Part shown: positions 296-61,296 of the stretch, piece after piece
Layout of the letters: the number at the start of each line of letters is the position of its first letter
How positions within the stretch are numbered: position 1 is the stretch's first letter
Virus record (IMG/VR): IMGVR_UViG_3300009103_000001
Coordinates: 62,001-126,000 of that record
Strand: one strand, 5' to 3'
DNA length: 64,000 bases
The notes under the pieces: generated by a model
What the model saw: only the letters and a program-made list of their open reading frames with translations
The model's database searches: none
What the model was told of the DNA's origin: nothing
Program-made: the position numbers and the translations under genes

Positions 296-305
296 GATAT
301 TTATA
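296..305 (+). promoter_or_regulatory. Putative late promoter element GATATTTATA
   Basis: Conserved ATATTTAT motif just upstream of ATG 313; the same motif precedes about 20 late genes. Confidence 0.6.
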
Positions 306-312
306 TATAACT

Positions 313-861
313 ATGGATATAAGAAAAATCATAAAAGAGGAAATGGAATCTAAAAATATAGGATATGAAGATATTGTATATGAAGATGATAACCTAATAG
401 TTATATATCCAAAAACAAGGGAAGCTTCATGTAATTATGGTGAAGACACAAATTGGTGTACAGCAGCTGAAGGTGGACAATCTTTCCATGAATATAATGA
501 TAAAGGTAACTTATATTATCATATATGGAAATTTAAAATGCCTAATAATAAACAAAACTATCAAAAAATTGCTAGATTCATTGAATATGGTAAAGAATAT
601 GGTGAACTTGGTGATTTTTTCTTATTTGATGATAGTCAAGTGGATAAGTATGAAATATTATTTAATATTTTAAATGGTAAAAAATTAAAGGAGGGTGGTT
701 TTGAGTATCCAGCAGAGTTAAAACCATTAAATGATTCTTGGGAAAAAGCTTTTATTGCTGTTGATACACATTATGCAAAAAATGGTTTACACAAAACACC
801 AACATATACGGAACCCGATATAGAAGATTTATGGGATGACGATTATGAAGAATTTTTCTAG
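313..861 (+). CDS. Leader-bearing protein (MDIRKIIKEE) with YG-x-x-T-x-WC domain, paralog of 1391 and 52418
   Basis: VYEDDNLIVIYPKTREASCNYGEDTNWCT motif shared with two other ORFs. Confidence 0.8.
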   Translation: MDIRKIIKEEMESKNIGYEDIVYEDDNLIVIYPKTREASCNYGEDTNWCTAAEGGQSFHEYNDKGNLYYHIWKFKMPNNKQNYQKIARFIEYGKEYGELGDFFLFDDSQVDKYEILFNILNGKKLKEGGFEYPAELKPLNDSWEKAFIAVDTHYAKNGLHKTPTYTEPDIEDLWDDDYEEFF

Positions 862-950
862 TGTAAATTGACTTTTATAGTCAATAACTTATATTTATAT
901 AGTAGACCAACCAATTAGGTACACACCTTAATCAATAATTAAAAATTATT

Positions 951-1070
951 ATGAGAAATTACGACCCAAACGATAAACCTTGCTTTGATGGTGATATTTA
1001 TGAAGATTTTATAGATGAAATCCCAGAAGAAGATATTTATTATAATATAGATGATTCTTTTGAATATTAA
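951..1070 (+). CDS. Small acidic hypothetical protein (39 aa)
   Basis: MRNYDPNDKPCFDGDIYEDFIDEIPEEDIYYNIDDSFEY*, A-rich upstream context; below the ORF-track size cutoff. Confidence 0.45.
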   Translation: MRNYDPNDKPCFDGDIYEDFIDEIPEEDIYYNIDDSFEY

Positions 1071-1390
1071 AAAAACATAATCATAAGAGATATAAGACCA
1101 TATACTGATACTAAAGACCTAGAGGTAGGTAAAAGATATATTGCCTATGATATAGGTAATGATGAACTTCATGGTGAACCTTTTATTGTTTTAAAAAAAA
1201 ATGAAAGTATAGATAATATACAAATTCACATCAAATGGCTTAATATGAATAGAGGTACTATCATAACAGAAAAATCTATAGGAAATTGGGAACCAATATT
1301 TAGACCTAGTATGGAGTGGATGTGGTTCTATAGATAATTTAATTCACACAACTTTATTGGATATTTATTATTAATAATATATTTATTGAT

Positions 1391-2839: not shown

Positions 2840-2970
2840 CCCATATTTTTAAGTTTATTTTCTAATTCAGTAATTTTTTCTAAATACCATTCTATAATTG
2901 TTTCATTATGGTGTAAACATACTTCTTTTTTATAATATTTAATATGTTCTATTATTTCTTCTTTTTCCAT
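2836..2970 (-). CDS. Small hypothetical protein (44 aa)
   Basis: MEKEEIIEHIKYYKKEVCLHHNETIIEWYLEKITELENKLKNMG*, fills the intergenic gap. Confidence 0.45.
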   Translation of the reverse strand: MEKEEIIEHIKYYKKEVCLHHNETIIEWYLEKITELENKLKNMG

Positions 2971-3595: not shown

Positions 3596-3726
3596 AAGCT
3601 TATTTGCTTTTAGCTAGCTTGCTTTTGCTGCTGCAGCGCTTAAATATATATAATATAATAAAAAGCATAATAAATATATTTTTTTTTAATCCTACCTTAT
3701 ATGAATCCCAAATATTTATAATAAGA

Positions 3727-4728: not shown

Positions 4729-6785
4729 GTAAAACTAAAATAAATAATAATGATTTTGAATGGGCCAAAGACATCCCATTAATTATGGATACTTGTGAAG
4801 CGTATGGTATATTAAAACCAGGTGATGAAATTATTATTGATGCGATAGATAATTGGGAGGATAACCCAAATCAATGGAATGATACTGATGAGATACAAAC
4901 CTTTTATAGTGTTAAAGCAAAGGTATTAGCTTTAGATGAGTGTAACAATATACATAGAAATAATGAAAGTAATGCTAATACAATTCTAGTATCAATAGAA
5001 GAGGATGGTTATTATGGGTTTGATGATTTATGGGTTGAAGATTTTGTTGGGACATTACCATCACAGTGTCAAAAAGATAATTGTATGTTTTTAATTTGTG
5101 ACACAAATGAGGAAGAATACCAAATAAAATTAATTGAACCATCGTTAAATGAGTCTGATGATTTTAAATGGGTTGATGGGATACCTAAAGATTATTACCC
5201 ACCAGACTTAGAGTCTGGACTTAAAGGTTTAGAAAAATGGGTGGGACAAGCTTATCAAATAGATGATGAGATAGGCCTTTCTGTTCAGGATGTAAAAGAA
5301 AATCCGAACAAAGAGAATATTCAAGATTTAATAAATGTTCTTAAACATTGGAAACCATATCATGATGGTGATGAAGTTTATTGGGCCGTGGAAGACCTTA
5401 TTTCTTCAATAAACCCATTTAGGTTTCAAGACTTAAATAATATGGGATTATTTGAATCTGATTTGGATTGGGTTAATAATACATCAAATAAGATACAGAA
5501 CACTGGTATTGGTCACGATGGACATATAATTTCTTTACAAGAAGTTTATTTCGATTTTTTAAGAACAATAGCTAAGGTTGAGGGTAATTATAACCCACGA
5601 CTTGAATCACACGCTACATTAGACACCAAATATACTAGAAAAGTAAGGGATTATTTAAATTTGAACAGTAGAGACTATCAAGGATTAGCACGTGAATTAC
5701 TTCGTATAGGTTTGGATGAAGCTTTTAAAATGTATTTTGATAATAAGCCACAATTAAGTGAATCTGATGAATTAAATTGGGTTAAGAGCACTGGTTTAGG
5801 TAAAGTAGATTTAAGAGATTGTAAACCTGGTGATATTTTAATCACTAGAAGTGGTAAAACTGTTGAGTATGTTGGCCCAACGGAAAAAGGTAATTATTAC
5901 GACCACGTAGTAAAATATAATGATGGCCATAGTTATGGTAGTAGGACACACGATGGTTATGTGTTTAGGAAAAATAGGCGAGATGATGATGAAGATATCA
6001 TTCATGTGTTAAAAGAATATAAAAAAACAATAACTGAGGCAGCAGGGATTTCATTTGAAGTGAGAAAATGGGGTGAAATTATCTATAATGAGATAATGAA
6101 TAACCCTGATGAGAAAAAAAGGTTAATCATTGATGGTTATGACCACCCTGAAGCGTTCAACGGATTCCCAATAGACTATGTTGTGATAGATTTTTACGAT
6201 AAATTAACGGGATATGGTCAAGAACATTCAGGATATGATAAAGATGGTAACTATGTTGTATTATTATACATACAACCGCAACTAATAAATAATGAATATA
6301 GAGGATATGATTTAAAATCGGCATTAAATCATGAAATGAAACATGCTTGGGAGGACTATCAAAGAGTATCAAAAGGTTATACTAATATTGAACAAACTAA
6401 AGAATCACAAGAGTTATATAATAAAGATTTCATACATTTAATGAGTGATGAAAATATTAAAGGGCCCATTAAAACAGTGTTAAAATATTTTTATTATTTA
6501 ACCAATTTAGAAAAAGGTCCTTATATGGAGAATGTTTATGATAGAAATCCGGCGTATGAAAATATGATTAGAAAAATTATATCTAAAGATTTTGAACAGT
6601 TTAAAGACCGTTTTGATTTAGATGTTAATTGGCATTTAGTAAATACAGCTTATGATATACCATTTGTAAAAAAATTTAAAACTCCATTAGATTTTATTGA
6701 CTATAGTTCTTCAGAACTTAAAAAAAGAGCAATTAAAGTTTTAAAAAAAATTAATAAAATGAAATACATACATGGAATGTTGTAA
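4725..6785 (+). CDS. Putative multi-module polyprotein with C-terminal HExxH metallopeptidase-like domain
   Basis: Internal linkers LNESDDFKW, LFESDLDW, LSESDELNW and ITE; HEMKH at ~6330. Confidence 0.8.
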   Translation: MSKTKINNNDFEWAKDIPLIMDTCEAYGILKPGDEIIIDAIDNWEDNPNQWNDTDEIQTFYSVKAKVLALDECNNIHRNNESNANTILVSIEEDGYYGFDDLWVEDFVGTLPSQCQKDNCMFLICDTNEEEYQIKLIEPSLNESDDFKWVDGIPKDYYPPDLESGLKGLEKWVGQAYQIDDEIGLSVQDVKENPNKENIQDLINVLKHWKPYHDGDEVYWAVEDLISSINPFRFQDLNNMGLFESDLDWVNNTSNKIQNTGIGHDGHIISLQEVYFDFLRTIAKVEGNYNPRLESHATLDTKYTRKVRDYLNLNSRDYQGLARELLRIGLDEAFKMYFDNKPQLSESDELNWVKSTGLGKVDLRDCKPGDILITRSGKTVEYVGPTEKGNYYDHVVKYNDGHSYGSRTHDGYVFRKNRRDDDEDIIHVLKEYKKTITEAAGISFEVRKWGEIIYNEIMNNPDEKKRLIIDGYDHPEAFNGFPIDYVVIDFYDKLTGYGQEHSGYDKDGNYVVLLYIQPQLINNEYRGYDLKSALNHEMKHAWEDYQRVSKGYTNIEQTKESQELYNKDFIHLMSDENIKGPIKTVLKYFYYLTNLEKGPYMENVYDRNPAYENMIRKIISKDFEQFKDRFDLDVNWHLVNTAYDIPFVKKFKTPLDFIDYSSSELKKRAIKVLKKINKMKYIHGML

Positions 6786-6810
6786 TTGTAATATATTTTT
6801 ATTATATTTG
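6780..6810 (+). promoter_or_regulatory. Bacteroidota sigma-A-type promoter (TTG-N20-TATATTTG)
   Basis: Matches the -33/-7 consensus TTG...TAnnTTTG upstream of ATG 6816. Confidence 0.55.
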
Positions 6811-6815
6811 TAGTT

Positions 6816-7373
6816 ATGAAAAAAATACTTACAACAATATTAATTTTAATTAGTCTATTATCTATAGGACAAGATAAAGAGTTATTTGAATATGTGAATC
6901 AATACCGAATAGGTAATAATTTAAAACCATTAGAGTGGTCTGATAAATTAGTTAAAATATCTATAGGACAAAATAATAAGAATATTAAAGATAAATCTTT
7001 ATCACATAGTGTACATAATTCTTATGAAAATTGTTTATTAGGTTATACTATAGCCCCAACCAAAACTGAACATAAAGATTTCATTAAATTTGTTAAAAAA
7101 TATTTTAATTACAAATATAATGTAGACAAAGATATGTCAAATGAAGAATTAAATAGTTTAACTAGGATGTACATGATTTATATTTGGCATAATTCACCAA
7201 AACATAAGGAAAATATGTTAAAAAAAGATGTTAAACATTGTTCATCTGAAAGTTATATTGGTGATTTCGAAATTTTTAATGGTAAATTAAATGTTAATGG
7301 TAAAAGTTATACATATAAACAATTATCTACACACTATAAAGTAGAGTATTACGCCACAATGAATTTACAATGA
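6816..7373 (+). CDS. CAP (SCP-like) domain protein with signal peptide
   Basis: N-terminal signal peptide; VNQYR...LKPLEWSDKL, LSHS, EN and WHNSPKHKENML motifs. Confidence 0.8.
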   Translation: MKKILTTILILISLLSIGQDKELFEYVNQYRIGNNLKPLEWSDKLVKISIGQNNKNIKDKSLSHSVHNSYENCLLGYTIAPTKTEHKDFIKFVKKYFNYKYNVDKDMSNEELNSLTRMYMIYIWHNSPKHKENMLKKDVKHCSSESYIGDFEIFNGKLNVNGKSYTYKQLSTHYKVEYYATMNLQ

Positions 7374-8390
7374 TGGTTCAAAAAAACAAGGTAGTTCCTT
7401 ACCCTTAACTTTCACTTTTTTACATTTAGGTTTTTTATGTGTTTTTTTAGTGAAAATACTTTTTCTATATTTATTATATTTTTTAGGTTTAAATGTTTGT
7501 TTTAGTTTAACCATTTCAACCTCATAGTTATACAACATAGAACCAGCTTCCATTTTTGTCTCAGCTGTAACTTCTAATAAAACACTTATTTTAACATACC
7601 TATATTCTTTAGTTTGTTCACGAGCCTCACTTTTTTCATTTCTCGACATATTTGGTCCATATATATTTGGCCCTTGGTTTGGTTTTGTAATCACATCAAC
7701 ATCATCTACATCAAAACTATCAACAATATTAACAACACTTTCAGCTCTAAGTTTAGCTAGTTCTTCATTACCCATACTTATAGGTTCTTTATCTGTAGAA
7801 GATTCAATAACAACTTTAGTTATTTCACCTTCTTCACTAAGTACATTGAAAATATCATTAATTTTACTTTTTGCGTATTCAGATAACTCATACCCACCCG
7901 TTTCAAAAATATTGTCAGTATCTAATTCAATAGAGTCCTCTAATACTATAATTGAATTTTTAGGTAAAAGTGTATCTTTAGTAACTTTTATGTCAGAAAC
8001 AGTGAAACCTTGTCTTTGTTTAGAAATTATACTATGGTCACTTTTAGTTTTATATGTTTCTATTTTTGCGTTTTCAAAATCTTTTTTACTAACAGATTTT
8101 AATTTTTCTAAATTTTCCCTATTCAACTCAATTTGAGCATCACTAAATAACTGATATAAATCCTCATCACCAGATTCTAATTTATTTTGTATTAACTCAG
8201 CCGCTTTTATATGTGACGAATCTATTGGTTGGGTTTGTGCTTTTATATCGGTCATTGAAGCTAAAGCTATTAATCCGGCTAAAGCCCATTCTTTAAACTC
8301 TTCCTCTAATATTTCTTCTTTTAATATTTCGTCACTTCTGTAGTTTATTACAGATTTAAGTTGACTCTCTTTTAGAATAATTCTTTTCAT
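7365..8390 (-). CDS. Leader-bearing OmpA-like (peptidoglycan-binding) domain protein
   Basis: MKRIILKESQLK leader; FETGGYEL, ESSTDKEP, NEELAKLRAESV and RYVKI resemble the OmpA C-terminal domain; ATATTTAT upstream on the minus strand (8396-8403). Confidence 0.7.
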   Translation of the reverse strand: MKRIILKESQLKSVINYRSDEILKEEILEEEFKEWALAGLIALASMTDIKAQTQPIDSSHIKAAELIQNKLESGDEDLYQLFSDAQIELNRENLEKLKSVSKKDFENAKIETYKTKSDHSIISKQRQGFTVSDIKVTKDTLLPKNSIIVLEDSIELDTDNIFETGGYELSEYAKSKINDIFNVLSEEGEITKVVIESSTDKEPISMGNEELAKLRAESVVNIVDSFDVDDVDVITKPNQGPNIYGPNMSRNEKSEAREQTKEYRYVKISVLLEVTAETKMEAGSMLYNYEVEMVKLKQTFKPKKYNKYRKSIFTKKTHKKPKCKKVKVKGKELPCFFEPSL

Positions 8391-8559
8391 ATAATATAAA
8401 TATTTATATTATACTAAAAAAATGTGGTATTACATTCTTTTGTGCATTTAGTACAATATACACCACCGACATCTCTTTGTGATGGTGGAATACAATGTAC
8501 TTTTGCGTGACAACAAGAACTAACTACTTTAGATGTTTTTTTTCTTTTAATTCTTTTTC

Positions 8560-9846: not shown

Positions 9847-9875
9847 TTTTAATATTTGTGTGATATTTATATAAT

Positions 9876-10298: not shown

Positions 10299-10336
10299 CT
10301 CTATAATTACTATATTAACTAATATTTATAGGTAAT

Positions 10337-12373: not shown

Positions 12374-12415
12374 ATTCTTTTCCATTCAAGAATATTTATA
12401 TAAAAAAACTTTTAT

Positions 12416-15406: not shown

Positions 15407-15488
15407 CATCACACCAACTAATTAATATTTAATATATCATAATTAAACATTTAATAGTATCTTAGATATTTATTAATAAAACAATATT

Positions 15489-22118: not shown

Positions 22119-22511
22119 ATGGGACAAAACTTTTTTATACGTAAAAATTCAGAATTACCAATATTAAAAATGAAAGTTATTAATGATGGTAGAAGTGATT
22201 ATAAAAAGATTTTTGATAATCTAGAGAATGCTGCAGTGACATTTTCAATGGTCGATTCTGAAACAGGTAAACCAAAAGTATTTAATAAACAAGCTTTTAT
22301 AATACCAGTAATAAAAGATATATGTAAAGAAGATGAAGAATACTATATTGGGTATAAATTTAGTGAAAGAGAAGTTAATAGAGTGGGAACATATAAAGCT
22401 GAATTTAAAATAGATTTTTTAGATGATGGGTGTTCATTAATTGTACCAATAAGAGAAGATTTATTTGTTAATGTAACAGATAGTTTCACTAACTCAAAAA
22501 TAGTTTGTTAA
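22119..22511 (+). CDS. Putative virion structural protein (BppU-like/Ig-like)
   Basis: FFIRKNSELPIL...AAVTFSM...GTYKAEFKIDF pattern; structural gene context. Confidence 0.6.
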   Translation: MGQNFFIRKNSELPILKMKVINDGRSDYKKIFDNLENAAVTFSMVDSETGKPKVFNKQAFIIPVIKDICKEDEEYYIGYKFSEREVNRVGTYKAEFKIDFLDDGCSLIVPIREDLFVNVTDSFTNSKIVC

Positions 22512-23050
22512 TGGAAAAATTAATTAAAAAAATATTAAAAGAAGAATTATTAAAAGAAAACTTAAGGTTTGATGATATCTATAGTGAGTTATGGGATAAG
22601 ATGTTATATAGTGTTTGTATGAAGTACACTAATGATATTAATGTAGCACAGGATTATTGTCAAAATGGTTTTATGAAAGTATATAATAATCTTCATACAT
22701 ATAAAAATACTGGTTCTTTAGAAGGTTGGGTTAGAAGAATTATTAATAACTCAATGATAGATGATTTTAGAAAAAAGAAAAATCAACCAACTGCACAAAC
22801 AATAGATGAACCGGATTGGGGACGTATAGATTCAGGGTATGATGATGAAGAATACAGTGAAGATGATAGGATGCACTATGTTAAACAAGCTATAACAAAT
22901 CTAAGCCCATCAAACAGAGAAGCTTTTGAATTATACTTGGATGGTTATAAACATGAAGAAATCGCTGATATGTTGGGCATTAGTGTTGTGGCCTCTAAAT
23001 CAAGGGTTTTTAAAGCTAAAAGAGAAATTAGGAAATTAATTAATCTCTAA
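22511..23050 (+). CDS. ECF-type sigma-70 factor carrying the shared leader (MEKLIKKILKEELLKE)
   Basis: Region 2 AQDYCQNGFMKVY...GSLEGWVRRIINNSMIDDFRK; region 4 LSPSNREAFEL...HEEIADMLGIS...SKSRVFKAK. Confidence 0.9.
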   Translation: MEKLIKKILKEELLKENLRFDDIYSELWDKMLYSVCMKYTNDINVAQDYCQNGFMKVYNNLHTYKNTGSLEGWVRRIINNSMIDDFRKKKNQPTAQTIDEPDWGRIDSGYDDEEYSEDDRMHYVKQAITNLSPSNREAFELYLDGYKHEEIADMLGISVVASKSRVFKAKREIRKLINL

Positions 23051-27138: not shown

Positions 27139-27173
27139 TACCAAACCTAAATTGTTTTTTAATAAATATCTGA

Positions 27174-27767: not shown

Positions 27768-27787
27768 ATAAATATCAAGATATTTAT
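27768..27787. promoter_or_regulatory. Back-to-back late promoter elements ATAAATATC-AA-GATATTTAT
   Basis: Perfect 9-bp inverted repeat between divergent genes 27764(-) and 27792(+). Confidence 0.65.
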
Positions 27788-28583: not shown

Positions 28584-28608
28584 ACATATTTATTAATAAA
28601 AAGAAATT

Positions 28609-28899
28609 ATGGACAGTTATTACATAGTAGATACACCAGCAACAGCTATTTATTCAGCTAACACATACTATTCGATTTATGTTGATGCGGGAGTCACATT
28701 AGTATATAAAGGTGTTACGTTCCCTGGACCCACAAGTGGACCAATAATAGTAAATTTAACAGTAAATGGACCAACTGATATTGCTGGTAGTGACGCTACT
28801 ATAATTCTAATGGGCAAGAAAAAACCACAAGCATTTGCACCAGGACCTCCAGGTCAAGGTGGTATGAATACTGATGGTACTTGGAATATAAAGGGGTAA
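28609..28899 (+). CDS. Small beta-rich late protein
   Basis: CATATTTATT at 28585; 96 aa. Confidence 0.7.
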   Translation: MDSYYIVDTPATAIYSANTYYSIYVDAGVTLVYKGVTFPGPTSGPIIVNLTVNGPTDIAGSDATIILMGKKKPQAFAPGPPGQGGMNTDGTWNIKG

Positions 28900-28914
28900 A
28901 ATAAAAATATTACA

Positions 28915-31216: not shown

Positions 31217-31242
31217 ATGCAATAATATTAATATTTATTAAT

Positions 31243-33565: not shown

Positions 33566-33594
33566 TGCCTAAAGATATTTATAGATAAAACTCT

Positions 33595-35624: not shown

Positions 35625-35697
35625 TTATTTTTAATGTTCACATTAAATAAAGATAAGTTATTGTTATTAGTGTAGATATTTATATTAAAATATTTTT

Positions 35698-37575: not shown

Positions 37576-37624
37576 TTATTGAAGCACTTATCATTTTCGG
37601 CATATTTATTTTAAAAATAATATT

Positions 37625-39329: not shown

Positions 39330-40460
39330 ATGAAAAAAGTTTTTTTAGAATACGTTTGGTTGGACGGAAATCAACCACAACAATTAAGAAGTAAAACTAA
39401 AGTTGTAAAACCTGAAGATATTAGAAAATATACTGATTCGGGGGTTATAAACCCCGAATATTCGGGATTTATTTGGGATTTACCTAAATGGTCTTTTGAT
39501 GGTAGTTCAACAAAACAGGCTAAAGCTGGAAAGGGGGAAAACACTGATTGTGTTTTAAAACCTGTATTTTCTTGTGATGACCCATTTAGAGGTGATTATC
39601 ATTACATTGTCCTTTGTGAGGTTTTAAATCCAGACGGAACCTTACACCCAACAAATAAAAGAGGTGAGTTAAGGGAGTTTATGGAAAAAAATAAAATAAC
39701 GGACTCTAAAGTTAGTTTAGAAAAAGCCAATTGGTTTGGTTGGGAACAAGAATATACTTTAACCACAAAACCGAATTTTAAAGAAGGTGAAGGATTACCA
39801 CTTGGGTTCAGACCTAATGAAGAACCTAGACCACAAGGAGATTATTATTGTGGTGTTGGAGCAGATAATATCACAGGTAGAAGAATTGTGGAAGAACATT
39901 TAGAAAAATGTGTTGAAGCTGGTTTGGATATCTCAGGTATTAACGCGGAAGTTATGTTAGGGCAATGGGAATACCAAATTGGACCTGTAACATCTCTTGA
40001 AGGGTCGGACCAATTATGGGTTTCTAGATATATTCTACAACGAGTGGCCGAAGAAAATGGTGTTAAAATATCATTTCACCCAAAACCAAAAACTGGTGAT
40101 TGGAATGGTTCAGGATGTCATGTCAATTTCTCAACCCCTGAAATGAGAAAAGAAGACGGTATTAAATTAATTAAAGATACAATGGCTAAATTAACACTTA
40201 CTCATGATGAACATATTAAAGTATATGGTTTATATAATGAAAAACGTATGACAGGTGAACATGAAACTTCTAGTATAAACGATTTTAGTTATGGTTATAG
40301 TACAAGAGATACTAGTATCAGAATTCCAGCACAGTCAATAATTGATGGTAAGGGTTATTTTGAAGACCGAAGACCCGCTTCTAATTGTGACCCATACAGT
40401 GTAGCATTACGTATGTTAAAAACTGTATATAACACTGTGAATGAAACAGTAGAAGTTTAA
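39330..40460 (+). CDS. glnII: Glutamine synthetase type II
   Basis: EYVWLDG, LRSKTK, WSFDGSST, EQEY, NAEVMLGQWEYQIGP, DWNGSGCH, SIRIP and YFEDRRPASNCDPY. Confidence 0.95.
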   Translation: MKKVFLEYVWLDGNQPQQLRSKTKVVKPEDIRKYTDSGVINPEYSGFIWDLPKWSFDGSSTKQAKAGKGENTDCVLKPVFSCDDPFRGDYHYIVLCEVLNPDGTLHPTNKRGELREFMEKNKITDSKVSLEKANWFGWEQEYTLTTKPNFKEGEGLPLGFRPNEEPRPQGDYYCGVGADNITGRRIVEEHLEKCVEAGLDISGINAEVMLGQWEYQIGPVTSLEGSDQLWVSRYILQRVAEENGVKISFHPKPKTGDWNGSGCHVNFSTPEMRKEDGIKLIKDTMAKLTLTHDEHIKVYGLYNEKRMTGEHETSSINDFSYGYSTRDTSIRIPAQSIIDGKGYFEDRRPASNCDPYSVALRMLKTVYNTVNETVEV

Positions 40461-42243: not shown

Positions 42244-42289
42244 TGGAATAAGTGAATTTATTGCATATTTATTAAGAAAAGTATTAAAT

Positions 42290-43980: not shown

Positions 43981-44010
43981 AAGGATAATAATATTTATAA
44001 TAAAATAATC

Positions 44011-46670: not shown

Positions 46671-46823
46671 ATGCTTAAAAATTTTATTCTATAAAAAAAA
46701 TATAATTAAAATAAACTAAAATAAAGTTTTTTTAACTTTTTCCACATTTAATACATATTTATTAGAAAACTCTAAGTGCTTTAGGGTTTTTTAATAATAT
46801 TATATAATAAAAAATAAAAAAAA

Positions 46824-48064: not shown

Positions 48065-49888
48065 ATGGGATATTTATTAAAATCTGGTGAGGTTGGAAAT
48101 ATCGGACTTAAGCATCAAAAAGCTATCCGTGAAGCAACCGTAAACAAGTGGAATGACCTAGGATTTCTTGAAGGTTTAGATGGGCATGTTAAAGAAAACA
48201 TCGCTCTTCTTTACGAGAACCAAGCGTCAACACTTATTAATGAGACAACAGATACGGCTGGTGGAGCATCAACTGGTTCTTTTGAAACAGTAGTTTTTCC
48301 AATCGTAAGGCGTGTTTTCTCAAAATTGTTAGCAAACGACATCGTTTCTGTTCAAGCATTAAATTTACCAATAGGTAAACTTTTCTATTTCGTACCAAAA
48401 GTATCGGATAGAGTTGAGAGTACATCTCCATCTTTTGCTGGTGGAGCATCTGGTGCTACTGCATCACATGGAGCACCAATAATCTGTCACTGTAACACAA
48501 CAGACTGTAATCCTACGACTTACTCTGAATGTGCTAAAAATATGTATGATAGATTTTATGATGACGGAATGTGGGACCAATCAAAAGGTCAAATAATGTT
48601 ACACGTTGATAACGGTACTATGGTAGTGTTTACTGCTTGTACTGACGCAACACTTGGTGTTCCTCATGAATTCATTGGTGGTGTTACTGCACAAGCTGGT
48701 GACGGTTCTGTTAGAAGTCAAATTGTACAAATTTGTAACTTTAGTACAGCTGGAGCTGGTAGACTTTTAGGTCCTGATGGAAATGAAATGGATACTGAAT
48801 CTTTCTTAGCATCAATTGCTGTTACACCTACTGGTACTTTAGTTGATAAAGATGGTTTAACAATTGCTGAGGCTGGTGACCAATTACCAGTTAGAGTTGT
48901 TACACAAAAATATGGTAGAGGTATCGTTTCTTATGGTGATATTTGTGACGCTGAAGGATGTATATTCTTAGAAGTTGATTTAACTCACCCAGTATGTGTA
49001 GAATGTGGTGATGGTACTTTCGATGGTTATATCGGAGCAGCATCTGGAACAACAGCTATTGTATCTGGTGTAGGTTCTAGTGACTTAGGAGGTGTAAACC
49101 TAGCAGTTACTTGGAGGTCTTACCAAGACCTTGAAGAAGAGTGTGAAATGGGAGAAGTATCTTTCGAACTTGATTCTGTTACAGTATCGGTTACTGAAAG
49201 AAAATTAAGAGCTACTTGGACTCCTGAATTAGCACAAGATGTGTCAGCGTTCCATAACATTGATGCAGAAGCTGAATTAACAGCATTACTTTCTGAACAA
49301 GTTGCAGCAGAAATCGACAGGGAAATCCTTAGAGATTTAAGAACTGGGGCGGCTTGGACATTAAGATGGGATTATAACGGATGGAAAAGGTTACCAAATA
49401 ACAACGGTTACACTCAAAAAGATTGGAACCAAACGTTGATTACAGCGGTTAACCAAATTTCAGCTCAAATCCATAAGTCTACTCTTAGGGGTGGTGCTAA
49501 CTTCGTAGTTGTATCTTCTGAGGTATCAGCCATTATGGATGACCTTGAATACTTCCACGTATCTAACGCAGCTCCAGAACAAGACCAATACAATATGGGT
49601 ATTGAAAGAGCTGGTTCTCTTGGTGGACGTTACACTGTATACCGTGACCCTTACGCTCCAGCACACTCGGTGTTAGTTGGACACAAAGGTAAATCACTAT
49701 TGGATACTGGGTATATTTACGCTCCGTATGTACCATTACAGTTAACTCCAACAATGTACAATCCATTTAACTTTGTACCTATCAAAGGTATAATGACGCG
49801 TTACGCGAAAAAGATGGTTAATAACAGGTTCTACGGACATATCCGTGTGGACGGTTTACGTACATTTGATGTTAGAGAATTGAGATAA
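48065..49888 (+). CDS. Major capsid protein (T4 gp23-like) with Cys-rich insertion
   Basis: PIVRRVF..LLANDIVSVQ, RKLRATWTPELAQD, EIDREI, YAPYVPLQ and GIMTRY. Confidence 0.95.
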   Translation: MGYLLKSGEVGNIGLKHQKAIREATVNKWNDLGFLEGLDGHVKENIALLYENQASTLINETTDTAGGASTGSFETVVFPIVRRVFSKLLANDIVSVQALNLPIGKLFYFVPKVSDRVESTSPSFAGGASGATASHGAPIICHCNTTDCNPTTYSECAKNMYDRFYDDGMWDQSKGQIMLHVDNGTMVVFTACTDATLGVPHEFIGGVTAQAGDGSVRSQIVQICNFSTAGAGRLLGPDGNEMDTESFLASIAVTPTGTLVDKDGLTIAEAGDQLPVRVVTQKYGRGIVSYGDICDAEGCIFLEVDLTHPVCVECGDGTFDGYIGAASGTTAIVSGVGSSDLGGVNLAVTWRSYQDLEEECEMGEVSFELDSVTVSVTERKLRATWTPELAQDVSAFHNIDAEAELTALLSEQVAAEIDREILRDLRTGAAWTLRWDYNGWKRLPNNNGYTQKDWNQTLITAVNQISAQIHKSTLRGGANFVVVSSEVSAIMDDLEYFHVSNAAPEQDQYNMGIERAGSLGGRYTVYRDPYAPAHSVLVGHKGKSLLDTGYIYAPYVPLQLTPTMYNPFNFVPIKGIMTRYAKKMVNNRFYGHIRVDGLRTFDVRELR

Positions 49889-50140: not shown

Positions 50141-50368
50141 TTTTATAAAAATAAAATACGTGAAACAGTTTTTTTTATTTTTTTCTTGATACGTATTCTT
50201 CTTATACGTGAAACTCTATTTTCAATTTCGAATAACTTACTTATGTTATCGTTAATTTCTATTATTTCTTTTCTTTTTTTCATAATGCATTAAGTATTAA
50301 ATATCAAATAATTCTCAAAAGTATCAAAAATTTAATAATAAAACAAGATATTTATAAAAAAGATTTTA

Positions 50369-52256: not shown

Positions 52257-52421
52257 ATAAACATCTAAATAAGATACCCCATATTTTCTGAGTTTCTCAC
52301 CCAAAGTGGCGTCATGAGGGTTTTCCTTGATTTCTTTAATAAAATGTTCTATAACATCCGAATAAAGTAAAACCAGTTCGTCTATATTAGATGTCGACCT
52401 TATTTTTTCTTTAAACGTCAT
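52242..52421 (-). CDS. Small protein with P-x-D-x-x-L-G-x-x-x-R motif (59 aa)
   Basis: MTFKEKIRSTSNIDELVLLYSDVIEHFIKEIKENPHDATLGEKLRKYGVSYLDVYKKGK*; ATGA-coupled to 52418. Confidence 0.65.
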   Translation of the reverse strand: MTFKEKIRSTSNIDELVLLYSDVIEHFIKEIKENPHDATLGEKLRKYGVSYLDVYKKGK

Positions 52422-53158
52422 TCTCTTATGCCTTTATTTTTAGCTACAACCATATTAGGTTCACCTTTTTCCATTTTTTCAGTTATGATATCCATAATTT
52501 CTGGTTTTACCATTCTATATACTTTTAGGGTATCAGTAACATTGAATTGTTTATCTTGAACATCCCAAATAGTCATACCATCTTTCTTATTTTTATCATT
52601 GTGGAAAGCCATTTTTGAGAAAACATTAGTTCTACAATCTTTATCTTTAACGGTTTTGTCTATTAAGAAAACTAAAACACCATTTTCAGTATATTGTTTG
52701 AAATAACGCCCATAGTTGTGGTCCTCACTTGATACACACCATTTTGTAGCTTTACCATACATGTTTGAACTACGTGTGGTAAGTGGTAAAATAACGACCC
52801 ATCTATCATCTTCATAAAGAACTTCTGTTTCCTTATTTTTAACTTCAGAACGAGTAATTTTTTCTTTGGCGAATTTAACAGCCTCTATAATGTCTTGGTT
52901 TGACTCATAAGAATATATGTCTTTATTTTCCAAAAGATTTCTTTCAGATAAATCTTCAAAATCTTTTATAACTTCAAACATTTCTTTAAAGGTTTCATTA
53001 TTAAGCTCATTATGAATCCAATCAACCCAATCCTTAGTTTGTTTAATCATGAAAGGTAAATATTTATTAGACTTTGTAGGGTCATTTTCAGATAAAACTT
53101 CTATTACATCAATAGAGTAAGTTGGGTGTTGTGCTTTAAGGTCTCTTTTTTTCGCCAT
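52418..53158 (-). CDS. Leaderless paralog of the YG-x-x-T-x-WC family
   Basis: NDPTKSNKYL, KDIYSY and LYEDDRWVVILPLTTRSSNMYGKATKWCVS. Confidence 0.85.
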   Translation of the reverse strand: MAKKRDLKAQHPTYSIDVIEVLSENDPTKSNKYLPFMIKQTKDWVDWIHNELNNETFKEMFEVIKDFEDLSERNLLENKDIYSYESNQDIIEAVKFAKEKITRSEVKNKETEVLYEDDRWVVILPLTTRSSNMYGKATKWCVSSEDHNYGRYFKQYTENGVLVFLIDKTVKDKDCRTNVFSKMAFHNDKNKKDGMTIWDVQDKQFNVTDTLKVYRMVKPEIMDIITEKMEKGEPNMVVAKNKGIRE

Positions 53159-53191: not shown

Positions 53192-53222
53192 CAAAGATAA
53201 TAATTTTTTTTAAACTATCAAA
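53192..53222 (-). promoter_or_regulatory. Bacteroidota-type promoter TTTG-N19-TATCTTTG
   Basis: Consensus match upstream of 53158. Confidence 0.6.
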
Positions 53223-53359
53223 CTATTTTATATTTTTTTTCGATTTTTCTCTAATTATTTTCCATATTGCTTAAGACAATATGGTTAATTACTTTATTCT
53301 TCAAATATAGACCAATTTTTTTAATTTAACAAGATATTTATTAAAAAAGATAATTTAAC

Positions 53360-57303: not shown

Positions 57304-57346
57304 TAAAATTGTTTATTAATAAATATCTTAAAATATTGTAATATAA

Positions 57347-58699: not shown

Positions 58700-58703
58700 A
58701 TTA

Positions 58704-58886
58704 CTATATTTCTATACCTCTATCTTTTAATTCTTTAATAACTATACTATAGTTTTCTTTTATATTACTCCAATGGTTAGATTTTTTTAATAATTCTAAT
58801 CTAACAAATTCATAATCTTCTCTTAGTTTTACTTTAAGTTCTAAAAGTTCCTTATTACTTTTTTTATTTATATCTTTAATTTTCAT
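58704..58886 (-). CDS. Small coiled-coil hypothetical protein
   Basis: 60 aa, coupled within the operon. Confidence 0.65.
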   Translation of the reverse strand: MKIKDINKKSNKELLELKVKLREDYEFVRLELLKKSNHWSNIKENYSIVIKELKDRGIEI

Positions 58887-59329
58887 TAATATATTTGTCC
58901 TTGTCCCGCTGGAATACCTAATATTGTACCGAAAACTTGTATTGGGCCTCCCGCATTACCACCTGTAGCTTGAATTTGTGAACCAGGTCTTATACCAACA
59001 TCAATTCTAGCTTCTGTTGTTAAGGCTTTTACTATTTCTTCCATCCTTATCTTTTCCATAATTTCGTCTGGAGCAACATCTCCACCAACTAAGGGGCCAA
59101 CAGGTAGTCCAGCCTCACTTTTTCTTTGTATTATTCTAGCTGCTATTTTATCTGGTGATAAACCTGGTTTATTTTTTCCAGTAAAAGCTATAATTTGTGG
59201 GGGTACTGATTGGTTTGGTATATTTGGTAATCTAAATAAATTTAATAATTCATTTAATATTGATTTTGAACTTTTAAAGTTAACCTTACCAAACTCTTCT
59301 GATTGTTTACATTTTACTTTATTACTCAT
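58886..59329 (-). CDS. Hypothetical baseplate-region protein
   Basis: 147 aa, Gly/Pro-rich C-terminus. Confidence 0.75.
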   Translation of the reverse strand: MSNKVKCKQSEEFGKVNFKSSKSILNELLNLFRLPNIPNQSVPPQIIAFTGKNKPGLSPDKIAARIIQRKSEAGLPVGPLVGGDVAPDEIMEKIRMEEIVKALTTEARIDVGIRPGSQIQATGGNAGGPIQVFGTILGIPAGQGQIY

Positions 59330-59344
59330 CTTATTATTTTTTTT

Positions 59345-60907
59345 TTAAACGTTATTAGTTACTTTTGGTGCTGGTAATTTTTCCATTGTACCATCTTTAA
59401 CTCCAGCTTTTTTTATAGTATAACTAACTATGATTTCTTTAATTTTTTTAATAGCTTTAGCAATTATTATTAAAGCTTGTTTTTGTATTAATTTAATTAT
59501 TTCTCTTTTTAATATTTTAAAAACAATTTCTGTTAAAGCGGCTAAAGCCTCTCTACCAATATATTCAAAAAATATAGGATTAGATTTTATAAATTCTGAA
59601 CTTTTTGTTGGTAAATTATTTAAACTACTAGCTCCATTAACCATAGAATTTGATAATTGATAGAAACACATAACTTTTGGTGTTAATATTGTCATATTCA
59701 TTATAGTTTTTGGTATTGAGGTTATTAAATCCTCCATTATTTTTTTCTGAGCTGATTCACTATTTTCAGGACCAACTTCTGTAGCTATTTGTGTACCAAC
59801 ACTTTTAAGTATATTATCTATGTTTTTTGTAATTTCTATATCATTACTCAAGTCAGTTAAAACTAAACCATTGATTGTTGTGTTAGTAGTACTCACTATC
59901 CCACACCCAACATCTAAATCATTAATACCATTTTTTCTTTGTCTTGCAGCATTTTCTATTTCAAAAATTTCATCATTTGAGAAAGAGAAAAAACTATTAT
60001 CAAAAACAATATCGTCTTCACACGGGTCAGTATTAAGAATATTATCTAACATTTTATTAGATAATTGTTCATCGGTTAATTCATCTAAACTTTTACCTAA
60101 TTCAGCGTCTAAATTACCAAAGACAGTATTAAGCATATTAGCCATAAAATTTTTTTTATCAAAAATTTCTAAACTATCAACAAAATCTCTAGAAAATTCA
60201 TTATATGTTTTATTATTATAATTACTGTTTATTTGTAGATTGATTTGGGCTGGTGCAATGAATTGTAAATCTAAGAGGTCACCATTAGGTCCAGACCAAG
60301 TTTCTACATTACCAGGGGTTTGTATAGTATTATATAAAAACCTATTAAAATCTTTAGATGGTTCACCATACATAAATGACGATAATGACGAATCTGGGTC
60401 ACTTTTCAACATACTACTAAAATCTACAGTTTGTAAATCTAAAAAAATGCTATTATTTTGTGGTAAAGTAAAATTTGACCCACATACAATAGATTCTTTT
60501 GTCCCAACCAGAATAGCGTCTTTAACAATATTAATTAATCTTGGATAAAATGTGGTTAAAACTTCTTTTAAGATGTCAGGCATCCCACTATTATTTATAG
60601 TTCTAGGGACTGCTGATTTTAAGTTACCTATATTTGGTTTTTTAGGTAGATTAAAGTTACCTTTATCAACCTTACTTAATGATTTTTTCTTTTTTTTTAT
60701 TTTTTTACCCTTTTCATTACTTTCATTATTTTCTTCTTTAGTCATACCTAAAGTTTCTAATAAAAAAGGTAATATATTTTTTTTCTTATCTTTTACACTA
60801 TCAATAGAGGATGTTTTTCCACCTGGAGGTAATTTAGGTAAATCAATAATAGTTTTATTTATACCGAGTTCAGCAATTATATTTTCCTTGTCTTGTATAA
60901 AACCCAT
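59345..60907 (-). CDS. Hypothetical late protein (520 aa)
   Basis: Long ORF in the late minus-strand operon. Confidence 0.8.
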   Translation of the reverse strand: MGFIQDKENIIAELGINKTIIDLPKLPPGGKTSSIDSVKDKKKNILPFLLETLGMTKEENNESNEKGKKIKKKKKSLSKVDKGNFNLPKKPNIGNLKSAVPRTINNSGMPDILKEVLTTFYPRLINIVKDAILVGTKESIVCGSNFTLPQNNSIFLDLQTVDFSSMLKSDPDSSLSSFMYGEPSKDFNRFLYNTIQTPGNVETWSGPNGDLLDLQFIAPAQINLQINSNYNNKTYNEFSRDFVDSLEIFDKKNFMANMLNTVFGNLDAELGKSLDELTDEQLSNKMLDNILNTDPCEDDIVFDNSFFSFSNDEIFEIENAARQRKNGINDLDVGCGIVSTTNTTINGLVLTDLSNDIEITKNIDNILKSVGTQIATEVGPENSESAQKKIMEDLITSIPKTIMNMTILTPKVMCFYQLSNSMVNGASSLNNLPTKSSEFIKSNPIFFEYIGREALAALTEIVFKILKREIIKLIQKQALIIIAKAIKKIKEIIVSYTIKKAGVKDGTMEKLPAPKVTNNV

Positions 60908-61260
60908 TATTTATCATCTTTTTTATCAAATAATTCTCTTAATAGGTCCATGTCTTCTGGATTTAAACTATCATTGTTGATATCATTAATCACATCACCT
61001 TTAAACACTAACTGACTCATTAGTTTTATTAATGATAATTTTTTATCTATAGTACTATCAATTAATTTTAATAAATCTGTATTAGCTTTATTTAAGTTAA
61101 CTAGGTCATGCATATCTTCTATGTCAACCTTTTTTTTATTTTCGTTAACTTGTCTAATAGCGGTACTTCTTTGTTCCACTAACTCATTATAAGCTTCTTG
61201 AGCCATACCCAAAAAACTATCTGTAGTGATTTTAACTTGTTTTTTTCTTGGTCGTGCCAT
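60907..61260 (-). CDS. Hypothetical coiled-coil late protein
   Basis: Late motif on the minus strand at 61275-61283. Confidence 0.75.
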   Translation of the reverse strand: MARPRKKQVKITTDSFLGMAQEAYNELVEQRSTAIRQVNENKKKVDIEDMHDLVNLNKANTDLLKLIDSTIDKKLSLIKLMSQLVFKGDVINDINNDSLNPEDMDLLRELFDKKDDK

Positions 61261-61296
61261 AATCTTTTTTATAAATAAATATCTATTATGACGATT

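What the first reader, a model, noticed from the sequence alone, without database searches (positions are those of the whole stretch)
296..61283. Genome-wide ATATTTAT late element, the inverse of the T4 TATAAATA box
Seen: (G/C/A)ATATTTAT(A/T) lies mostly 4-25 nt before starts. Plus-strand copies are at 296, 1361/1379, 3712, 9862, 10322, 12392, 15465, 27779, 28585, 31231, 33574, 35675, 37601, 42264, 43991, 46754 (longer leader), 50347 and 53333. Minus-strand copies are at 8396, 27161, 27768, 57319 and 61275. It precedes terminase, portal, protease, scaffold, neck and cargo genes but not the genes with host-type promoters. Established: T4 late promoters are a lone TATAAATA box read by gp55; TATTTATA is its reverse complement. 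Inference: this is a late promoter read by the gp55-like factor at 61297-62079.
Basis: partly seen in the sequence, partly recalled or inferred. Interest (0 to 1): 0.6.

Follow-up and report, generated by a model that had tools for sequence, protein, structure and literature searches.

The report
Late-promoter box of a flavobacterial-type jumbo phage
The eight-base word ATATTTAT sits just in front of the head, tail and packaging genes of this large T4-related phage and all its aquatic relatives. It is most likely the late promoter, read by a previously unannotated phage protein that resembles the T4 late sigma factor gp55.

Summary
ATATTTAT is the most over-represented oriented 8-mer in front of genes: 45 sense copies in the 45 nt before starts, against 5.8±2.4 in dinucleotide shuffles of those regions.

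- **Extended form:** G-ATATTTAT-N4-A, with no -35/-33 partner. It ends 4-7 or 12-18 nt before the ATG.
- **Conservation:** it is an exact 8-mer before the terminase gene in 47 of 48 distinct relatives (TerL identity 100% to 47%). It also precedes structural genes of the cultured Flavobacterium phage immuto.
- **Genes it precedes:** terminase, portal, prohead protease, scaffold/capsid, head-completion, tail-spike, sheath and tube genes.
- **The factor:** ORF 61297-62079(-) matches no Pfam or PHROG family. Its model has a sigma-2 fold whose best PDB match is T4 gp55 (Z 10.1). A profile-profile comparison with gp55s gives 91.5% probability. It is predicted to dock on the RNA polymerase beta-prime clamp helices.

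The late-promoter reading is well supported indirectly. Assigning the box to this particular factor is plausible but unproven, because the genome has two more sigma genes and relatives have others. The "inverse of the T4 box" idea has no mechanistic weight. No RNA data exist, so start sites are inferred. It is a new variant of a known kind.

The parts
297..304 (+). ATATTTAT box, 8 nt before ATG 313 (182-aa ORF)
1361..1368 (+). box, 22 nt before ATG 1391 (tandem with the next)
1379..1386 (+). box, 4 nt before ATG 1391 (482-aa ORF); leaderless-type spacing
3712..3719 (+). box, 7 nt before ATG 3727 (333-aa ORF)
8396..8403 (-). box, 5 nt before ATG 8390 (OmpA-domain protein 7365-8390); overlaps a palindromic + copy at 8400-8407
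9863..9870 (+). box, 5 nt before ATG 9876
10322..10329 (+). box, 7 nt before ATG 10337 (395-aa ORF)
12392..12399 (+). box, 16 nt before ATG 12416 (996-aa tail-spike-like protein)
15466..15473 (+). box, 15 nt before ATG 15489 (similar to immuto 'head completion protein')
27162..27169 (-). box, 23 nt before ATG 27138
27768..27775 (-). box before gene 27174-27758/27764; back-to-back with the + box at 27780 in a ~30-nt divergent gap
27780..27787 (+). box, 4 nt before ATG 27792 (nucleotidyltransferase-like ORF); leaderless-type spacing
28586..28593 (+). box, 15 nt before ATG 28609
31231..31238 (+). box, 4 nt before ATG 31243; preceded by hairpin + T-run
33575..33582 (+). box, 12 nt before ATG 33595 of the large terminase; 8 nt after an intrinsic-terminator-like hairpin; exact 8-mer in 47/48 distinct relatives
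35676..35683 (+). box, 14 nt before ATG 35698 of the portal gene
37602..37609 (+). box, 15 nt before ATG 37625
42265..42272 (+). box, 17 nt before ATG 42290 (prohead protease homologue)
43991..43998 (+). box, 12 nt before ATG 44011 (381-aa ORF)
46755..46762 (+). box, 61 nt before ATG 46824 (scaffold-like gene, followed by Gp23 capsid gene 48065-49888); leader starts with a stable hairpin
50348..50355 (+). box, 13 nt before ATG 50369
53334..53341 (+). box, 18 nt before ATG 53360
57319..57326 (-). box, 15 nt before ATG 57303 (500-aa ORF)
61275..61282 (-). box, 14 nt after the stop of the sigma-like gene and 14 nt before ATG 61260 (conserved 117-aa ORF); same arrangement in 7/7 genomes compared
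61297..62079 (-). candidate reader: 260-aa sigma-like protein (P0001), sigma-2 domain related to T4 gp55 plus a helical C-terminal domain
22511..23050 (+). rival reader: sigma-70/ECF-type factor (Sigma70_r2 E 7e-15; phrog_1740); not found in 5 relatives
6780..6810 (+). host-type (Bacteroidota-like) promoter TTG-N-TAnnTTTG before gene 6816-7373: the contrasting promoter class
53192..53332 (-). two tandem host-type TTG-N-TAnnTTTG promoter-like sites before gene 52418-53158(-)

Best explanation
ATATTTAT, in its extended form G-ATATTTAT-N4-A, is the single-element core of the late promoters of a widespread clade of aquatic T4-related jumbo phages. Their hosts are probably Flavobacteriia. The box has no -35 partner.

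**Inferred mechanism**
- The host core RNA polymerase is redirected by the phage protein encoded at 61297-62079(-). This is a divergent sigma whose region-2 domain is homologous to T4 gp55.
- That protein binds the beta-prime clamp helices and reads the box as a -10-like element.
- Transcription starts about 5 nt downstream, at the conserved A.
- The resulting mRNAs are either leaderless (ATG 4-5 nt after the box) or carry A-rich leaders of about 10-12 nt without a Shine-Dalgarno sequence.

**Shown:** the motif statistics, its orientation and spacing, its conservation, its association with structural genes, and the sigma-2 fold and gp55 relationship of the protein.

**Inferred:** that the box is a promoter, where transcription starts, that expression is late, and that this protein rather than another sigma reads it.
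For: **The motif is real.** There are 45 sense copies against 5.8±2.4 in shuffles, z = 16.5, top of all A/T 8-mers. Sense outnumbers antisense 44 to 10. Of 120 copies, 65 lie in the 6.9% of the genome that is intergenic.

**Promoter-like anatomy**
- A lies 5 nt after the box in 45 of 51 sites, and in 39 of 44 sites when the ATG class is excluded. Neighbouring positions are 55% A, p about 2e-6.
- No information is found at -35. TTG lies 17-23 nt upstream in 4 of 51 sites, the same as in controls.
- Two back-to-back boxes occupy a roughly 30-nt divergent gap.
- A box lies 8 nt after a terminator hairpin before TerL.

**Conservation**
- It is an exact 8-mer before TerL in 47 of 48 distinct relatives, down to 47% TerL identity, while flanking columns are 36-79% conserved.
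- It is the top upstream 8-mer in every tier of relatives.
- In Flavobacterium phage immuto it precedes TerL, sheath, tube, hub, tail spike and a virion structural protein. Early small genes there use GTTG-N20-TATATTTAG.

**Late-gene association here.** It precedes TerL, portal, prohead protease, scaffold plus Gp23 capsid, head completion, tail spike, sheath and tube genes.

**The factor**
- Its best match among 48,161 PDB representatives is T4 gp55, entry 7d7d_F: Z 10.1, 2.6 Å over 97 residues. The next matches are all sigma domain 2.
- hhalign of its family against nine gp55s gives 91.5% probability, E 8.7e-7, aligning residues 62-143 with gp55 residues 40-122.
- A profile search of PDB finds SigA at E 0.0096 and gp55 at E 0.13.
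- Its most conserved residues (K114, S117, Y118, T121) align with the sigma segment FSTYATWWIRQAI, which from textbook knowledge I take to be region 2.3, the -10-reading segment.
- In a predicted complex with F. johnsoniae beta-prime residues 1-420, ipSAE is 0.76 against a best control of 0.00. That mark was reached by 51 of 78 solved complexes and 2 of 108 mismatched pairs. Runs agree in at least 76% of contacts and partner pLDDT is at least 74. The interface joins beta-prime 272-319 to residues 51-66 and 86-105.
- A homologue is present in 5 of 5 related records.
- In immuto, tblastn finds a homologue (27% identity) and no Sigma70_r2 match appears anywhere in the complete genome.
- No phage RNA polymerase beta or beta-prime was found.
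Against: - There is no transcript or start-site evidence of any kind, because no RNA run holds the sequence.
- The protein fails the curated gp55 model (phrog_234 and phrog_12791 give no hit). It is below the Sigma70_r2 cut-off at 16.7 bits against 24.
- Z 10 for a helical domain lies in the range the tool flags as possibly generic.
- The contig has two bona fide sigma-70-type genes. Three relatives carry other Sigma70_r2 genes of about 280 aa.
- No gp33 and no gp45-type clamp was found, so the T4 activation mechanism is not demonstrated.
- The sigma-like gene sits at the end of a long operon with no recognised early promoter.
- The conserved A is weaker in relatives, at 57-71%.
- The complex prediction may reflect memory of solved sigma-polymerase complexes.
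- Only 6 of 53 boxes follow a terminator-like hairpin.
Confidence: 0.55

Rival explanations
1. The box is a promoter, but it is read by something other than the 61297 protein. Candidates are the phage's sigma-70/ECF-type factors (window 22511-23050; contig 28305-28907), the sigma-70-type genes of about 280 aa found in relatives, or host sigma-A holoenzyme modified by a phage appropriator.
For: - Two clear Sigma70_r2 genes lie on the contig.
- Relatives G001-G003 carry other Sigma70_r2 genes at E 1e-17 to 1e-20.
- The box shares the core ATATTT with the host-type -7 box TATATTTG seen in this phage's early promoters and with immuto's early TATATTTAG.
Against: - The two ECF-type genes have no homologue in 5 of 5 relatives, although the box is invariant there.
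- Immuto has the box and a 61297 homologue but no Sigma70_r2 match in its complete genome.
- ECF and group-3 sigmas normally need a -35 element, and none is present. This is textbook knowledge.
- The box lacks the T and G that define TAnnTTTG and lacks the -33 TTG.
Confidence: 0.22
2. The word acts in RNA, not DNA. It could be an AU-rich translation enhancer or ribosome landing pad for mRNAs without a Shine-Dalgarno sequence, or a nuclease processing site that trims polycistronic late RNA just before each start codon.
For: - The word has tight, bimodal spacing to the ATG, at 4-5 and 14-16 nt.
- Only 27 of 250 genes have a Shine-Dalgarno-like tetramer, so some other initiation signal is needed.
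- Many boxes lie inside co-directional gene strings where read-through RNA would contain them.
Against: - Boxes occur up to 61 nt, and in immuto about 98 nt, from the ATG.
- One lies directly after a terminator hairpin before TerL in most relatives.
- Back-to-back copies lie in a divergent gap where both transcripts must start.
- A dedicated, co-conserved sigma-like protein exists.
- An exact 8-mer is stricter than known AU-rich enhancers. This is my own knowledge.
Confidence: 0.1
3. The pattern is an artefact of AT-rich intergenic composition or of my gene calls.
For: The genome is 29% G+C and the upstream regions are 78% A+T.
Against: - z = 16.5 against dinucleotide shuffles of the same regions.
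- It ranks first of 256 A/T 8-mers.
- Strand asymmetry is 44 to 10.
- It is invariant across relatives whose flanks have diverged.
- The result holds with the deposited annotation of immuto.
Confidence: 0.01

Closest known systems
Bacteriophage T4 late transcription: TATAAATA box read by gp55 with gp33 and the gp45 clamp
   Same: - Both use a single 8-bp A/T box with no -35 element. The T4 box lies just upstream of the start, at -13 to -6 (PMC1524935).
- Both boxes stand in front of head, tail and packaging genes of a phage with T4-type terminase, portal (gp20) and Gp23 capsid.
- Both have a small phage sigma with only a region-2-like core. Here that core is homologous to gp55 at profile and fold level.
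- The box tolerates lineage-specific drift, as already seen in phage Aeh1 with CTAAATA (PMC1524935).
   Different: - The consensus is ATATTTAT. The sub-word TATTTATA matches TATAAATA at 6 of 8 positions, with the central AA changed to TT.
- The factor is 260 aa with an extra helical C-terminal domain of about 95 aa, whereas gp55 has 185 aa.
- It does not match the gp55 family models.
- No gp33 or gp45-type clamp was detected here, in two near-complete relatives or in immuto.
- Many box-to-ATG distances of 4-5 nt imply leaderless mRNAs.
- Shine-Dalgarno sites are not used.
Bacteroidota housekeeping (sigma-A) promoters: -33 TTTG and -7 TAnnTTTG (own knowledge of the B. fragilis and Flavobacterium literature)
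   Same: Both are A/T-rich elements close to the start with a TTT core. The phage's own early-type promoters fit this consensus (17 intergenic TTG-N17-23-TAnnTTTG sites). The late box shares ATATTT with their TATATTTG.
   Different: - The late box has G, not T, before it and AT, not G, after the TTT.
- It has no -33 TTG (4 of 51 sites, equal to controls).
- It is kept as an exact 8-mer.
Other phage-encoded minimal sigma or specificity subunits, such as AR9 non-virion polymerase gp226 and ECF-type phage sigmas
   Same: The sigma-2 fold is shared. AR9 holoenzyme entry 7s01_A is the third-best structural match, at Z 8.8.
   Different: No phage multisubunit RNA polymerase genes were found here. 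The promoter words are unrelated.

Membership tests
T4-type late transcription system | Factor matches the curated gp55 family models (PHROG 234 / 12791) | tested here: not met
   The PHROG scan of the ORF gave no family. A genome-wide phrog_234 search gave only a spurious 13-bit hit containing a stop codon, and phrog_12791 gave none. T4 gp55 itself scores E 3e-69 on phrog_234.
T4-type late transcription system | Factor is a remote homologue of gp55, with a sigma-region-2-like core | tested here: met
   hhalign of family against family: 91.5% probability, E 8.7e-7, 80 columns. The best of 48,161 PDB representatives is gp55, entry 7d7d_F: Z 10.1, rmsd 2.6 Å over 97 residues. Caveat: the domain is helical, and the tool warns about Z below about 13 in such cases.
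T4-type late transcription system | Promoter is one short A/T box with no -35 element | tested here: met
   No column from -50 to -2 exceeds 0.37 bit. TTG at the -33 position occurs in 4 of 51 sites, as in controls.
T4-type late transcription system | Box consensus is TATAAATA | tested here: not met
   The consensus is ATATTTAT(A/T). It matches at 6 of 8 positions when read as TATTTATA.
T4-type late transcription system | Box lies at about -13 to -6 from the transcription start | not testable with these tools
   No RNA run holds the sequence. Indirect evidence: A at the 5th nt after the box in 45 of 51 sites, and ATG at the 5th-6th nt in the leaderless-type class.
T4-type late transcription system | Box precedes orthologues of T4 late (virion and packaging) genes and not early genes | tested here: met
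   It precedes TerL, portal, protease, scaffold/Gp23, head completion, tail spike, sheath and tube genes. The same holds under the deposited annotation of immuto. Small-ORF clusters carry host-type promoters. Expression timing itself was not measured.
T4-type late transcription system | gp33 co-activator present | tested here: inconclusive
   The conserved 117-aa ORF next to the sigma-like gene is not gp33-like (hhalign probability 0.07%). No other search for gp33 was run. The contig is 64% complete.
T4-type late transcription system | gp45-type sliding clamp present as activator | tested here: inconclusive
   Pfam DNA_PPF and gp45-slide_C give no hit in the contig, in two relatives at least 96% complete, or in immuto. 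There was no positive-control genome, so absence is not proven.
T4-type late transcription system | Factor binds host core RNA polymerase at the beta-prime clamp helices | tested here: met
   This is a model only. ipSAE is 0.76 against a best control of 0.00, a mark reached by 51 of 78 solved complexes and 2 of 108 mismatched pairs. Contact agreement is at least 76% and partner pLDDT at least 74. The interface involves beta-prime residues 272-319. The result may reflect memory of solved sigma complexes.
Sigma-70 family (Pfam) | Sigma70_r2 above the gathering score, with region 4 present | tested here: not met
   Region 2 scores 16.7 bits against a cut-off of 24. The Pfam scan returned nothing. 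TIGR02937 gives E 0.09. The C-terminal domain resembles sigma region 4 only at Z about 5.
Bacteroidota sigma-A promoter | -7 box TAnnTTTG together with -33 TTG | tested here: not met
   T at the position before the box in 7 of 51 sites. The base after TTT is A, then T. The -33 TTG is absent.

The most novel reading that the evidence does not exclude
A globally distributed clade of flavobacterial-type T4-like phages runs late transcription with a self-sufficient two-domain gp55 relative. The clade includes jumbo genomes up to 380 kb and the cultured phage immuto. In this reading the C-terminal domain of the factor replaces the gp33/gp45 clamp-coupled activation of T4. The factor reads a new box, G-ATATTTAT-N4-A. 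A large share of late messages, including terminase in most relatives, begin exactly at the A of the ATG, making them leaderless mRNAs in a Bacteroidota host.
Probability: 0.3. Interest if true: 0.7.

Novelty: new variant of a known kind. Interest (0 to 1): 0.6.

Why it matters
- **A function for an unannotated family.** The protein family has over 2,000 metagenomic members (816 clusters at 50% identity), and every source that names it calls it hypothetical.
- **A simple annotation marker.** G-ATATTTAT-N4-A marks late genes and true start codons in a large, uncultured group of aquatic jumbo phages. It corrected the TerL, protease and 27792 starts here.
- **How far the T4 late-transcription scheme has drifted.** This lineage has a new box, a longer factor and no detectable clamp or gp33.
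- **A testable model.** Phage immuto with Flavobacterium sp. LMO8 is a culturable system for testing sigma appropriation and leaderless translation in Bacteroidota, where translation initiation without Shine-Dalgarno pairing is still poorly understood.

Tried and rejected
- **Close relatives:** megablast of 8 kb against deposited phages gave no match.
- **Transcript evidence:** the one search for sequencing runs found no RNA holder, and the RNA runs of related studies share next to none of the words. I therefore did not use read laying, and start sites could not be mapped.
- **Single-sequence searches with the factor:** the PDB search gave only noise. Foldseek against PDB gave only weak rows (E at least 0.07), though most were sigma factors.
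- **gp55 family models:** no real hit.
- **gp45 clamp models:** no hit in four genomes.
- **gp33:** the neighbouring 117-aa family is unrelated and its PDB profile search is empty of meaning.
- **Phage RNA polymerase beta and beta-prime:** none found.
- **Terminator idea:** the idea that boxes generally follow terminators was rejected. Only 6 of 53 do, against 12 of 198 control starts.
- **A -35 or -33 partner:** none found.
- **Rfam and tRNA scans of the window:** empty.
- **Literature:** no paper in the held library links ATATTTAT or TATTTATA to a phage promoter.

Full report
**What the window is.** The window is bases 62001-126000 of a 210,157-bp viral contig from IMG/VR. CheckV estimates it as 64% complete, and it is about 29% G+C. 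It encodes three T4-type core genes:
- a large terminase at 33595-35385;
- a gp20-type portal at 35698-37575;
- a Gp23 major capsid protein at 48065-49888, Pfam E 4.6e-71.

The closest deposited phage by terminase is Flavobacterium phage vB_FspM_immuto at 30% identity, followed by a Microcystis phage, an uncultured phage and T4-like cyanophages. Only 27 of 250 called genes have a Shine-Dalgarno-like tetramer. Seventeen intergenic sites fit TTG-N17-23-TAnnTTTG, which I know as the Bacteroidota housekeeping promoter (enrichment p 1e-7). The host is therefore probably a member of the Flavobacteriia. This is inference.

**Checking the observation.** Several are written one base low because they include the preceding base. 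The window has 44 copies against 24.4±5.1 in shuffles, and 25 of them lie directly before an ORF start.

On the whole contig, with my own 250 gene calls:
- 65 of 120 copies lie in the 6.9% of sequence that is intergenic;
- the 45 nt before starts hold 45 sense copies, against 5.8±2.4 in 1000 dinucleotide-preserving shuffles of those same regions (z 16.5);
- the word ranks first of all 256 A/T-only 8-mers, and first of the 56 permutations of its own letters;
- sense outnumbers antisense 44 to 10.

**Anatomy of the element.**
- An EM refinement gives (A/t)T(A/t)TTTAT(W) in about a third of upstream regions.
- Aligned on the word, G is favoured just before it, in 22 of 51 sites.
- The fifth base after it is A in 45 of 51 sites. 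That is 39 of 44 when sites whose ATG supplies that A are removed, against 55% A in neighbouring columns, p 2e-6.
- In copies antisense to coding sequence, the same position is A in only 11 of 36.
- No column between -50 and -2 carries a -35-like signal. There is only a weak T-rich patch 14-17 nt upstream.
- TTG at the Bacteroidota -33 position occurs in 4 of 51 sites, as in shifted controls.

The distance from box to ATG is bimodal. Here it is 4-7 and 12-18 nt. In 448 unique contexts from relatives the peaks are at 4-5 and 14-16 nt, and most apparent distances of -2 resolve to an in-frame ATG at 4.

**Conservation.** I fetched 80 related loci through the terminase.
- Of 48 distinct 100-nt upstream sequences, 47 contain the exact 8-mer. 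Terminase identity in this set falls from 100% to 47%. Flanking columns show only 36-79% majority bases.
- Many of these have a hairpin and T-run, then the box 8-10 nt later, then 4 nt and the ATG.
- The short N-terminal peptide before the second ATG is conserved as protein, so the first ATG is the real start.
- The word is the top upstream sense 8-mer in every tier of relatives, at 74-76%, 62-70%, 60% and 47-49% terminase identity.

In the cultured phage immuto, using the deposited annotation, the word precedes many structural genes:
- terminase (18 nt);
- tail sheath (26 nt);
- tail tube (22 nt);
- baseplate hub (31 nt);
- a virion structural protein (22 nt);
- a tail spike (11 nt);
- the scaffold/capsid unit, with a long leader.

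Immuto's block of small early genes instead uses GTTG-N20-TATATTTAG with a conserved leader.

**Which genes carry the box.** Pfam and PHROG hits, plus tblastn against immuto, label the box-bearing genes as follows:
- terminase, portal and prohead protease (42290);
- the scaffold-like gene (46824), with the capsid gene behind it;
- a head-completion-like gene (15489) and tail-spike-like genes (12416);
- outside the window, tail sheath, tube and fibre-like genes.

Some non-structural genes also carry it, including an OmpA-domain protein and a nucleotidyltransferase-like protein. Clusters of small ORFs carry host-type promoters instead. Timing was not measured. 'Late' rests on analogy with T4, where late promoters stand only before late-gene orthologues (PMC1524935).

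**Why a promoter rather than an RNA signal.**
- At 27768(-)/27780(+), two boxes lie back to back in the roughly 30-nt gap between divergent genes, where both transcripts must begin.
- Before the terminase gene the box follows a terminator-like hairpin.
- Boxes can lie 50-100 nt from the ATG.
- The conserved A fits an initiating purine.

With T4 geometry, box at -13 to -6 (PMC1524935), or one base closer, the 4-5-nt class would give mRNAs that start at the A of the ATG. The 14-16-nt class would give A-rich leaders of about 10-12 nt. This is inference. The RNA-signal rival keeps some weight because of the tight spacing.

**The proposed reader, ORF 61297-62079(-).**

*Family scans.*
- It has no Pfam or PHROG family.
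- It gives only weak hints: TIGR02937 at E 0.09 and Sigma70_r2 at 16.7 bits in the genome scan.

*Distribution.*
- It has 2,033 relatives in the word-indexed search, all unnamed or 'hypothetical'. Several are from Tara samples, on contigs up to 380 kb.
- An exhaustive search finds 816 clusters at 50% identity.

*Fold.*
- A 90-sequence alignment gave an AlphaFold model with mean pLDDT 91.
- Its best match among 48,161 PDB representatives is T4 gp55 in the gp45-dependent activation complex: entry 7d7d_F, Z 10.1, rmsd 2.6 Å over 97 residues.
- The next matches are sigma-B, the AR9 specificity subunit, sigma-A domain 2, pro-sigma-K and RpoS.
- The tool cautions that Z below about 13 can be generic for helical domains.

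*Profile searches.*
- The family profile finds SigA (E 0.0096), gp55 (E 0.13) and an ECF sigma in PDB sequences.
- hhalign against T4 gp55 alone gives 50% probability.
- hhalign against an alignment of nine diverse gp55s gives 91.5%, E 8.7e-7, aligning residues 62-143 with gp55 40-122.

*Residues and domains.*
- The most conserved residues (K114, S117, Y118, T121) align with the sigma segment FSTYATWWIRQAI. From textbook knowledge this is region 2.3, which reads and melts the -10 element.
- Residues 166-260 form a further helical domain that resembles sigma region 4 only weakly, at Z about 5.

*Predicted docking.* I ran a predicted complex with residues 1-420 of Flavobacterium johnsoniae beta-prime:
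- ipSAE is 0.76 against a best control of 0.00;
- that mark was reached by 51 of 78 solved complexes and 2 of 108 mismatched pairs;
- runs agree in at least 76% of contacts, and partner pLDDT is at least 74;
- the contacts join beta-prime 272-319, the clamp helices, to residues 51-66 and 86-105 of the factor.

This supports sigma-like docking but may reflect memory of solved holoenzymes.

**Is it this factor that reads the box?**

*For.*
- A homologue is present in 5 of 5 related records, at 59-74% identity.
- In all seven genomes compared, the box lies 11-15 nt after its stop codon, before a conserved ORF of about 117 aa.
- Immuto has a homologue (27% identity) and the box, but no Sigma70_r2 match anywhere in its complete genome.
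- The contig's two ordinary sigma-70/ECF-type genes, window 22511-23050 and contig 28305-28907, have no homologue in the five relatives.
- No phage RNA polymerase subunits were found.

*Against.*
- Three relatives carry other Sigma70_r2 genes of about 280 aa. The missing third of this genome could hold one.
- The T4 helpers were not found. There is no gp45-type clamp by Pfam in this contig, in two near-complete relatives or in immuto. The neighbouring 117-aa protein is not gp33-like.

**The 'inverse of T4' idea.** TATTTATA is indeed the reverse complement of TATAAATA. However, the element is strictly co-oriented with its genes, and only 26 of 51 sites have the final A. Read in the same direction, the two words already agree at 6 of 8 positions. 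The relation is best described as drift of a T4-type box. Phage Aeh1 already shows such drift with CTAAATA (PMC1524935).

**Novelty.** No paper in the held library mentions this word as a phage promoter. The scheme is known: a single-box late promoter plus a small phage sigma. The new parts are the box, the longer factor, the apparent lack of clamp and gp33, and the leaderless-type spacing. I rate it a new variant of a known kind.

**Limits.**
- Gene starts are from my own simple caller.
- The contig is incomplete.
- Host, timing, start sites and the factor-box link are all inferred.
- Read laying was not used because no RNA run held the sequence.

Noticed in passing
window 22511-23050 (+); contig G000:C1 28305-28907 (+): Two ordinary sigma-70/ECF-type genes sit in the same phage (Sigma70_r2 E 7e-15 and 2.6e-5; phrog_1740). 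Neither has a homologue in five related records. Three of those records instead carry different Sigma70_r2 genes of about 280 aa. Their target promoters are unknown.
   Followed up: partly
window 60907-61260 (-): A highly conserved ORF of 116-133 aa follows the sigma-like gene in the window, four of the five relatives and immuto; in relative L098 no such ORF was called. It starts MARPKKK, has a PEDMxLLRxxF motif near the C-terminus, and is 62-72% identical among the jumbo-phage relatives aligned. It is not gp33-like and has no PDB relative by sequence.
   Followed up: partly
window 61297 to beyond 64000 (contig 123297-152231, minus strand): The sigma-like gene is the last of about 35 co-directional minus-strand genes spanning roughly 29 kb. 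The genes next to it are glycosyltransferase-like. I found only two ATATTTAT boxes in this stretch, at the far end, and no host-type promoter. How the sigma gene itself is transcribed is unclear.
   Followed up: no
window 46763-46795 (+): The 61-nt leader of the scaffold-like gene begins, right after the box, with a stable hairpin plus U-run (-11.1 kcal/mol, z -4.3). It could be a 5' stabiliser, an attenuator, or the terminator of the upstream unit overlapping the promoter. Immuto also has a long gap of about 98 nt before its scaffold gene.
   Followed up: partly
L094 (immuto NC_055915) 60954-76222: Eighteen copies of a bipartite early promoter, GTTG-N~20-TATATTTAG, are each followed by a near-identical leader (GTATCAATAATTAAAAC...) before small ORFs. 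This is a strikingly uniform early-gene cassette.
   Followed up: no
window 23729-26206 (-); 39330-40460 (+); 7365-8390 (-); 27792-28583 (+): Auxiliary genes are present: a full ClpB/ClpA-type AAA+ chaperone (825 aa), a glutamine-synthetase-like protein, an OmpA-domain protein and a nucleotidyltransferase-like protein. The last two stand behind ATATTTAT boxes.
   Followed up: no
window 48069-48077 (+); 994-1001 and 1033-1040 (+): GATATTTAT also arises inside coding sequence, as Gly-Tyr-Leu at the start of the capsid gene and as Asp-Ile-Tyr twice in a 39-aa ORF. Not every copy is a signal.
   Followed up: yes
whole contig: Only 27 of 250 genes have a Shine-Dalgarno-like tetramer. Upstream regions are A-rich (AATAAAAA-type words), as expected for a Bacteroidota-type host.
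   Followed up: partly
L084 (relative, TerL 48% identical): This is the single relative without the box before its terminase gene. Its upstream region has TTTATATT instead. It may be a variant box or a different start.
   Followed up: no
window 8396-8407: Two copies on opposite strands overlap within a 12-nt palindrome. Only the minus copy faces a gene (7365-8390).
   Followed up: yes
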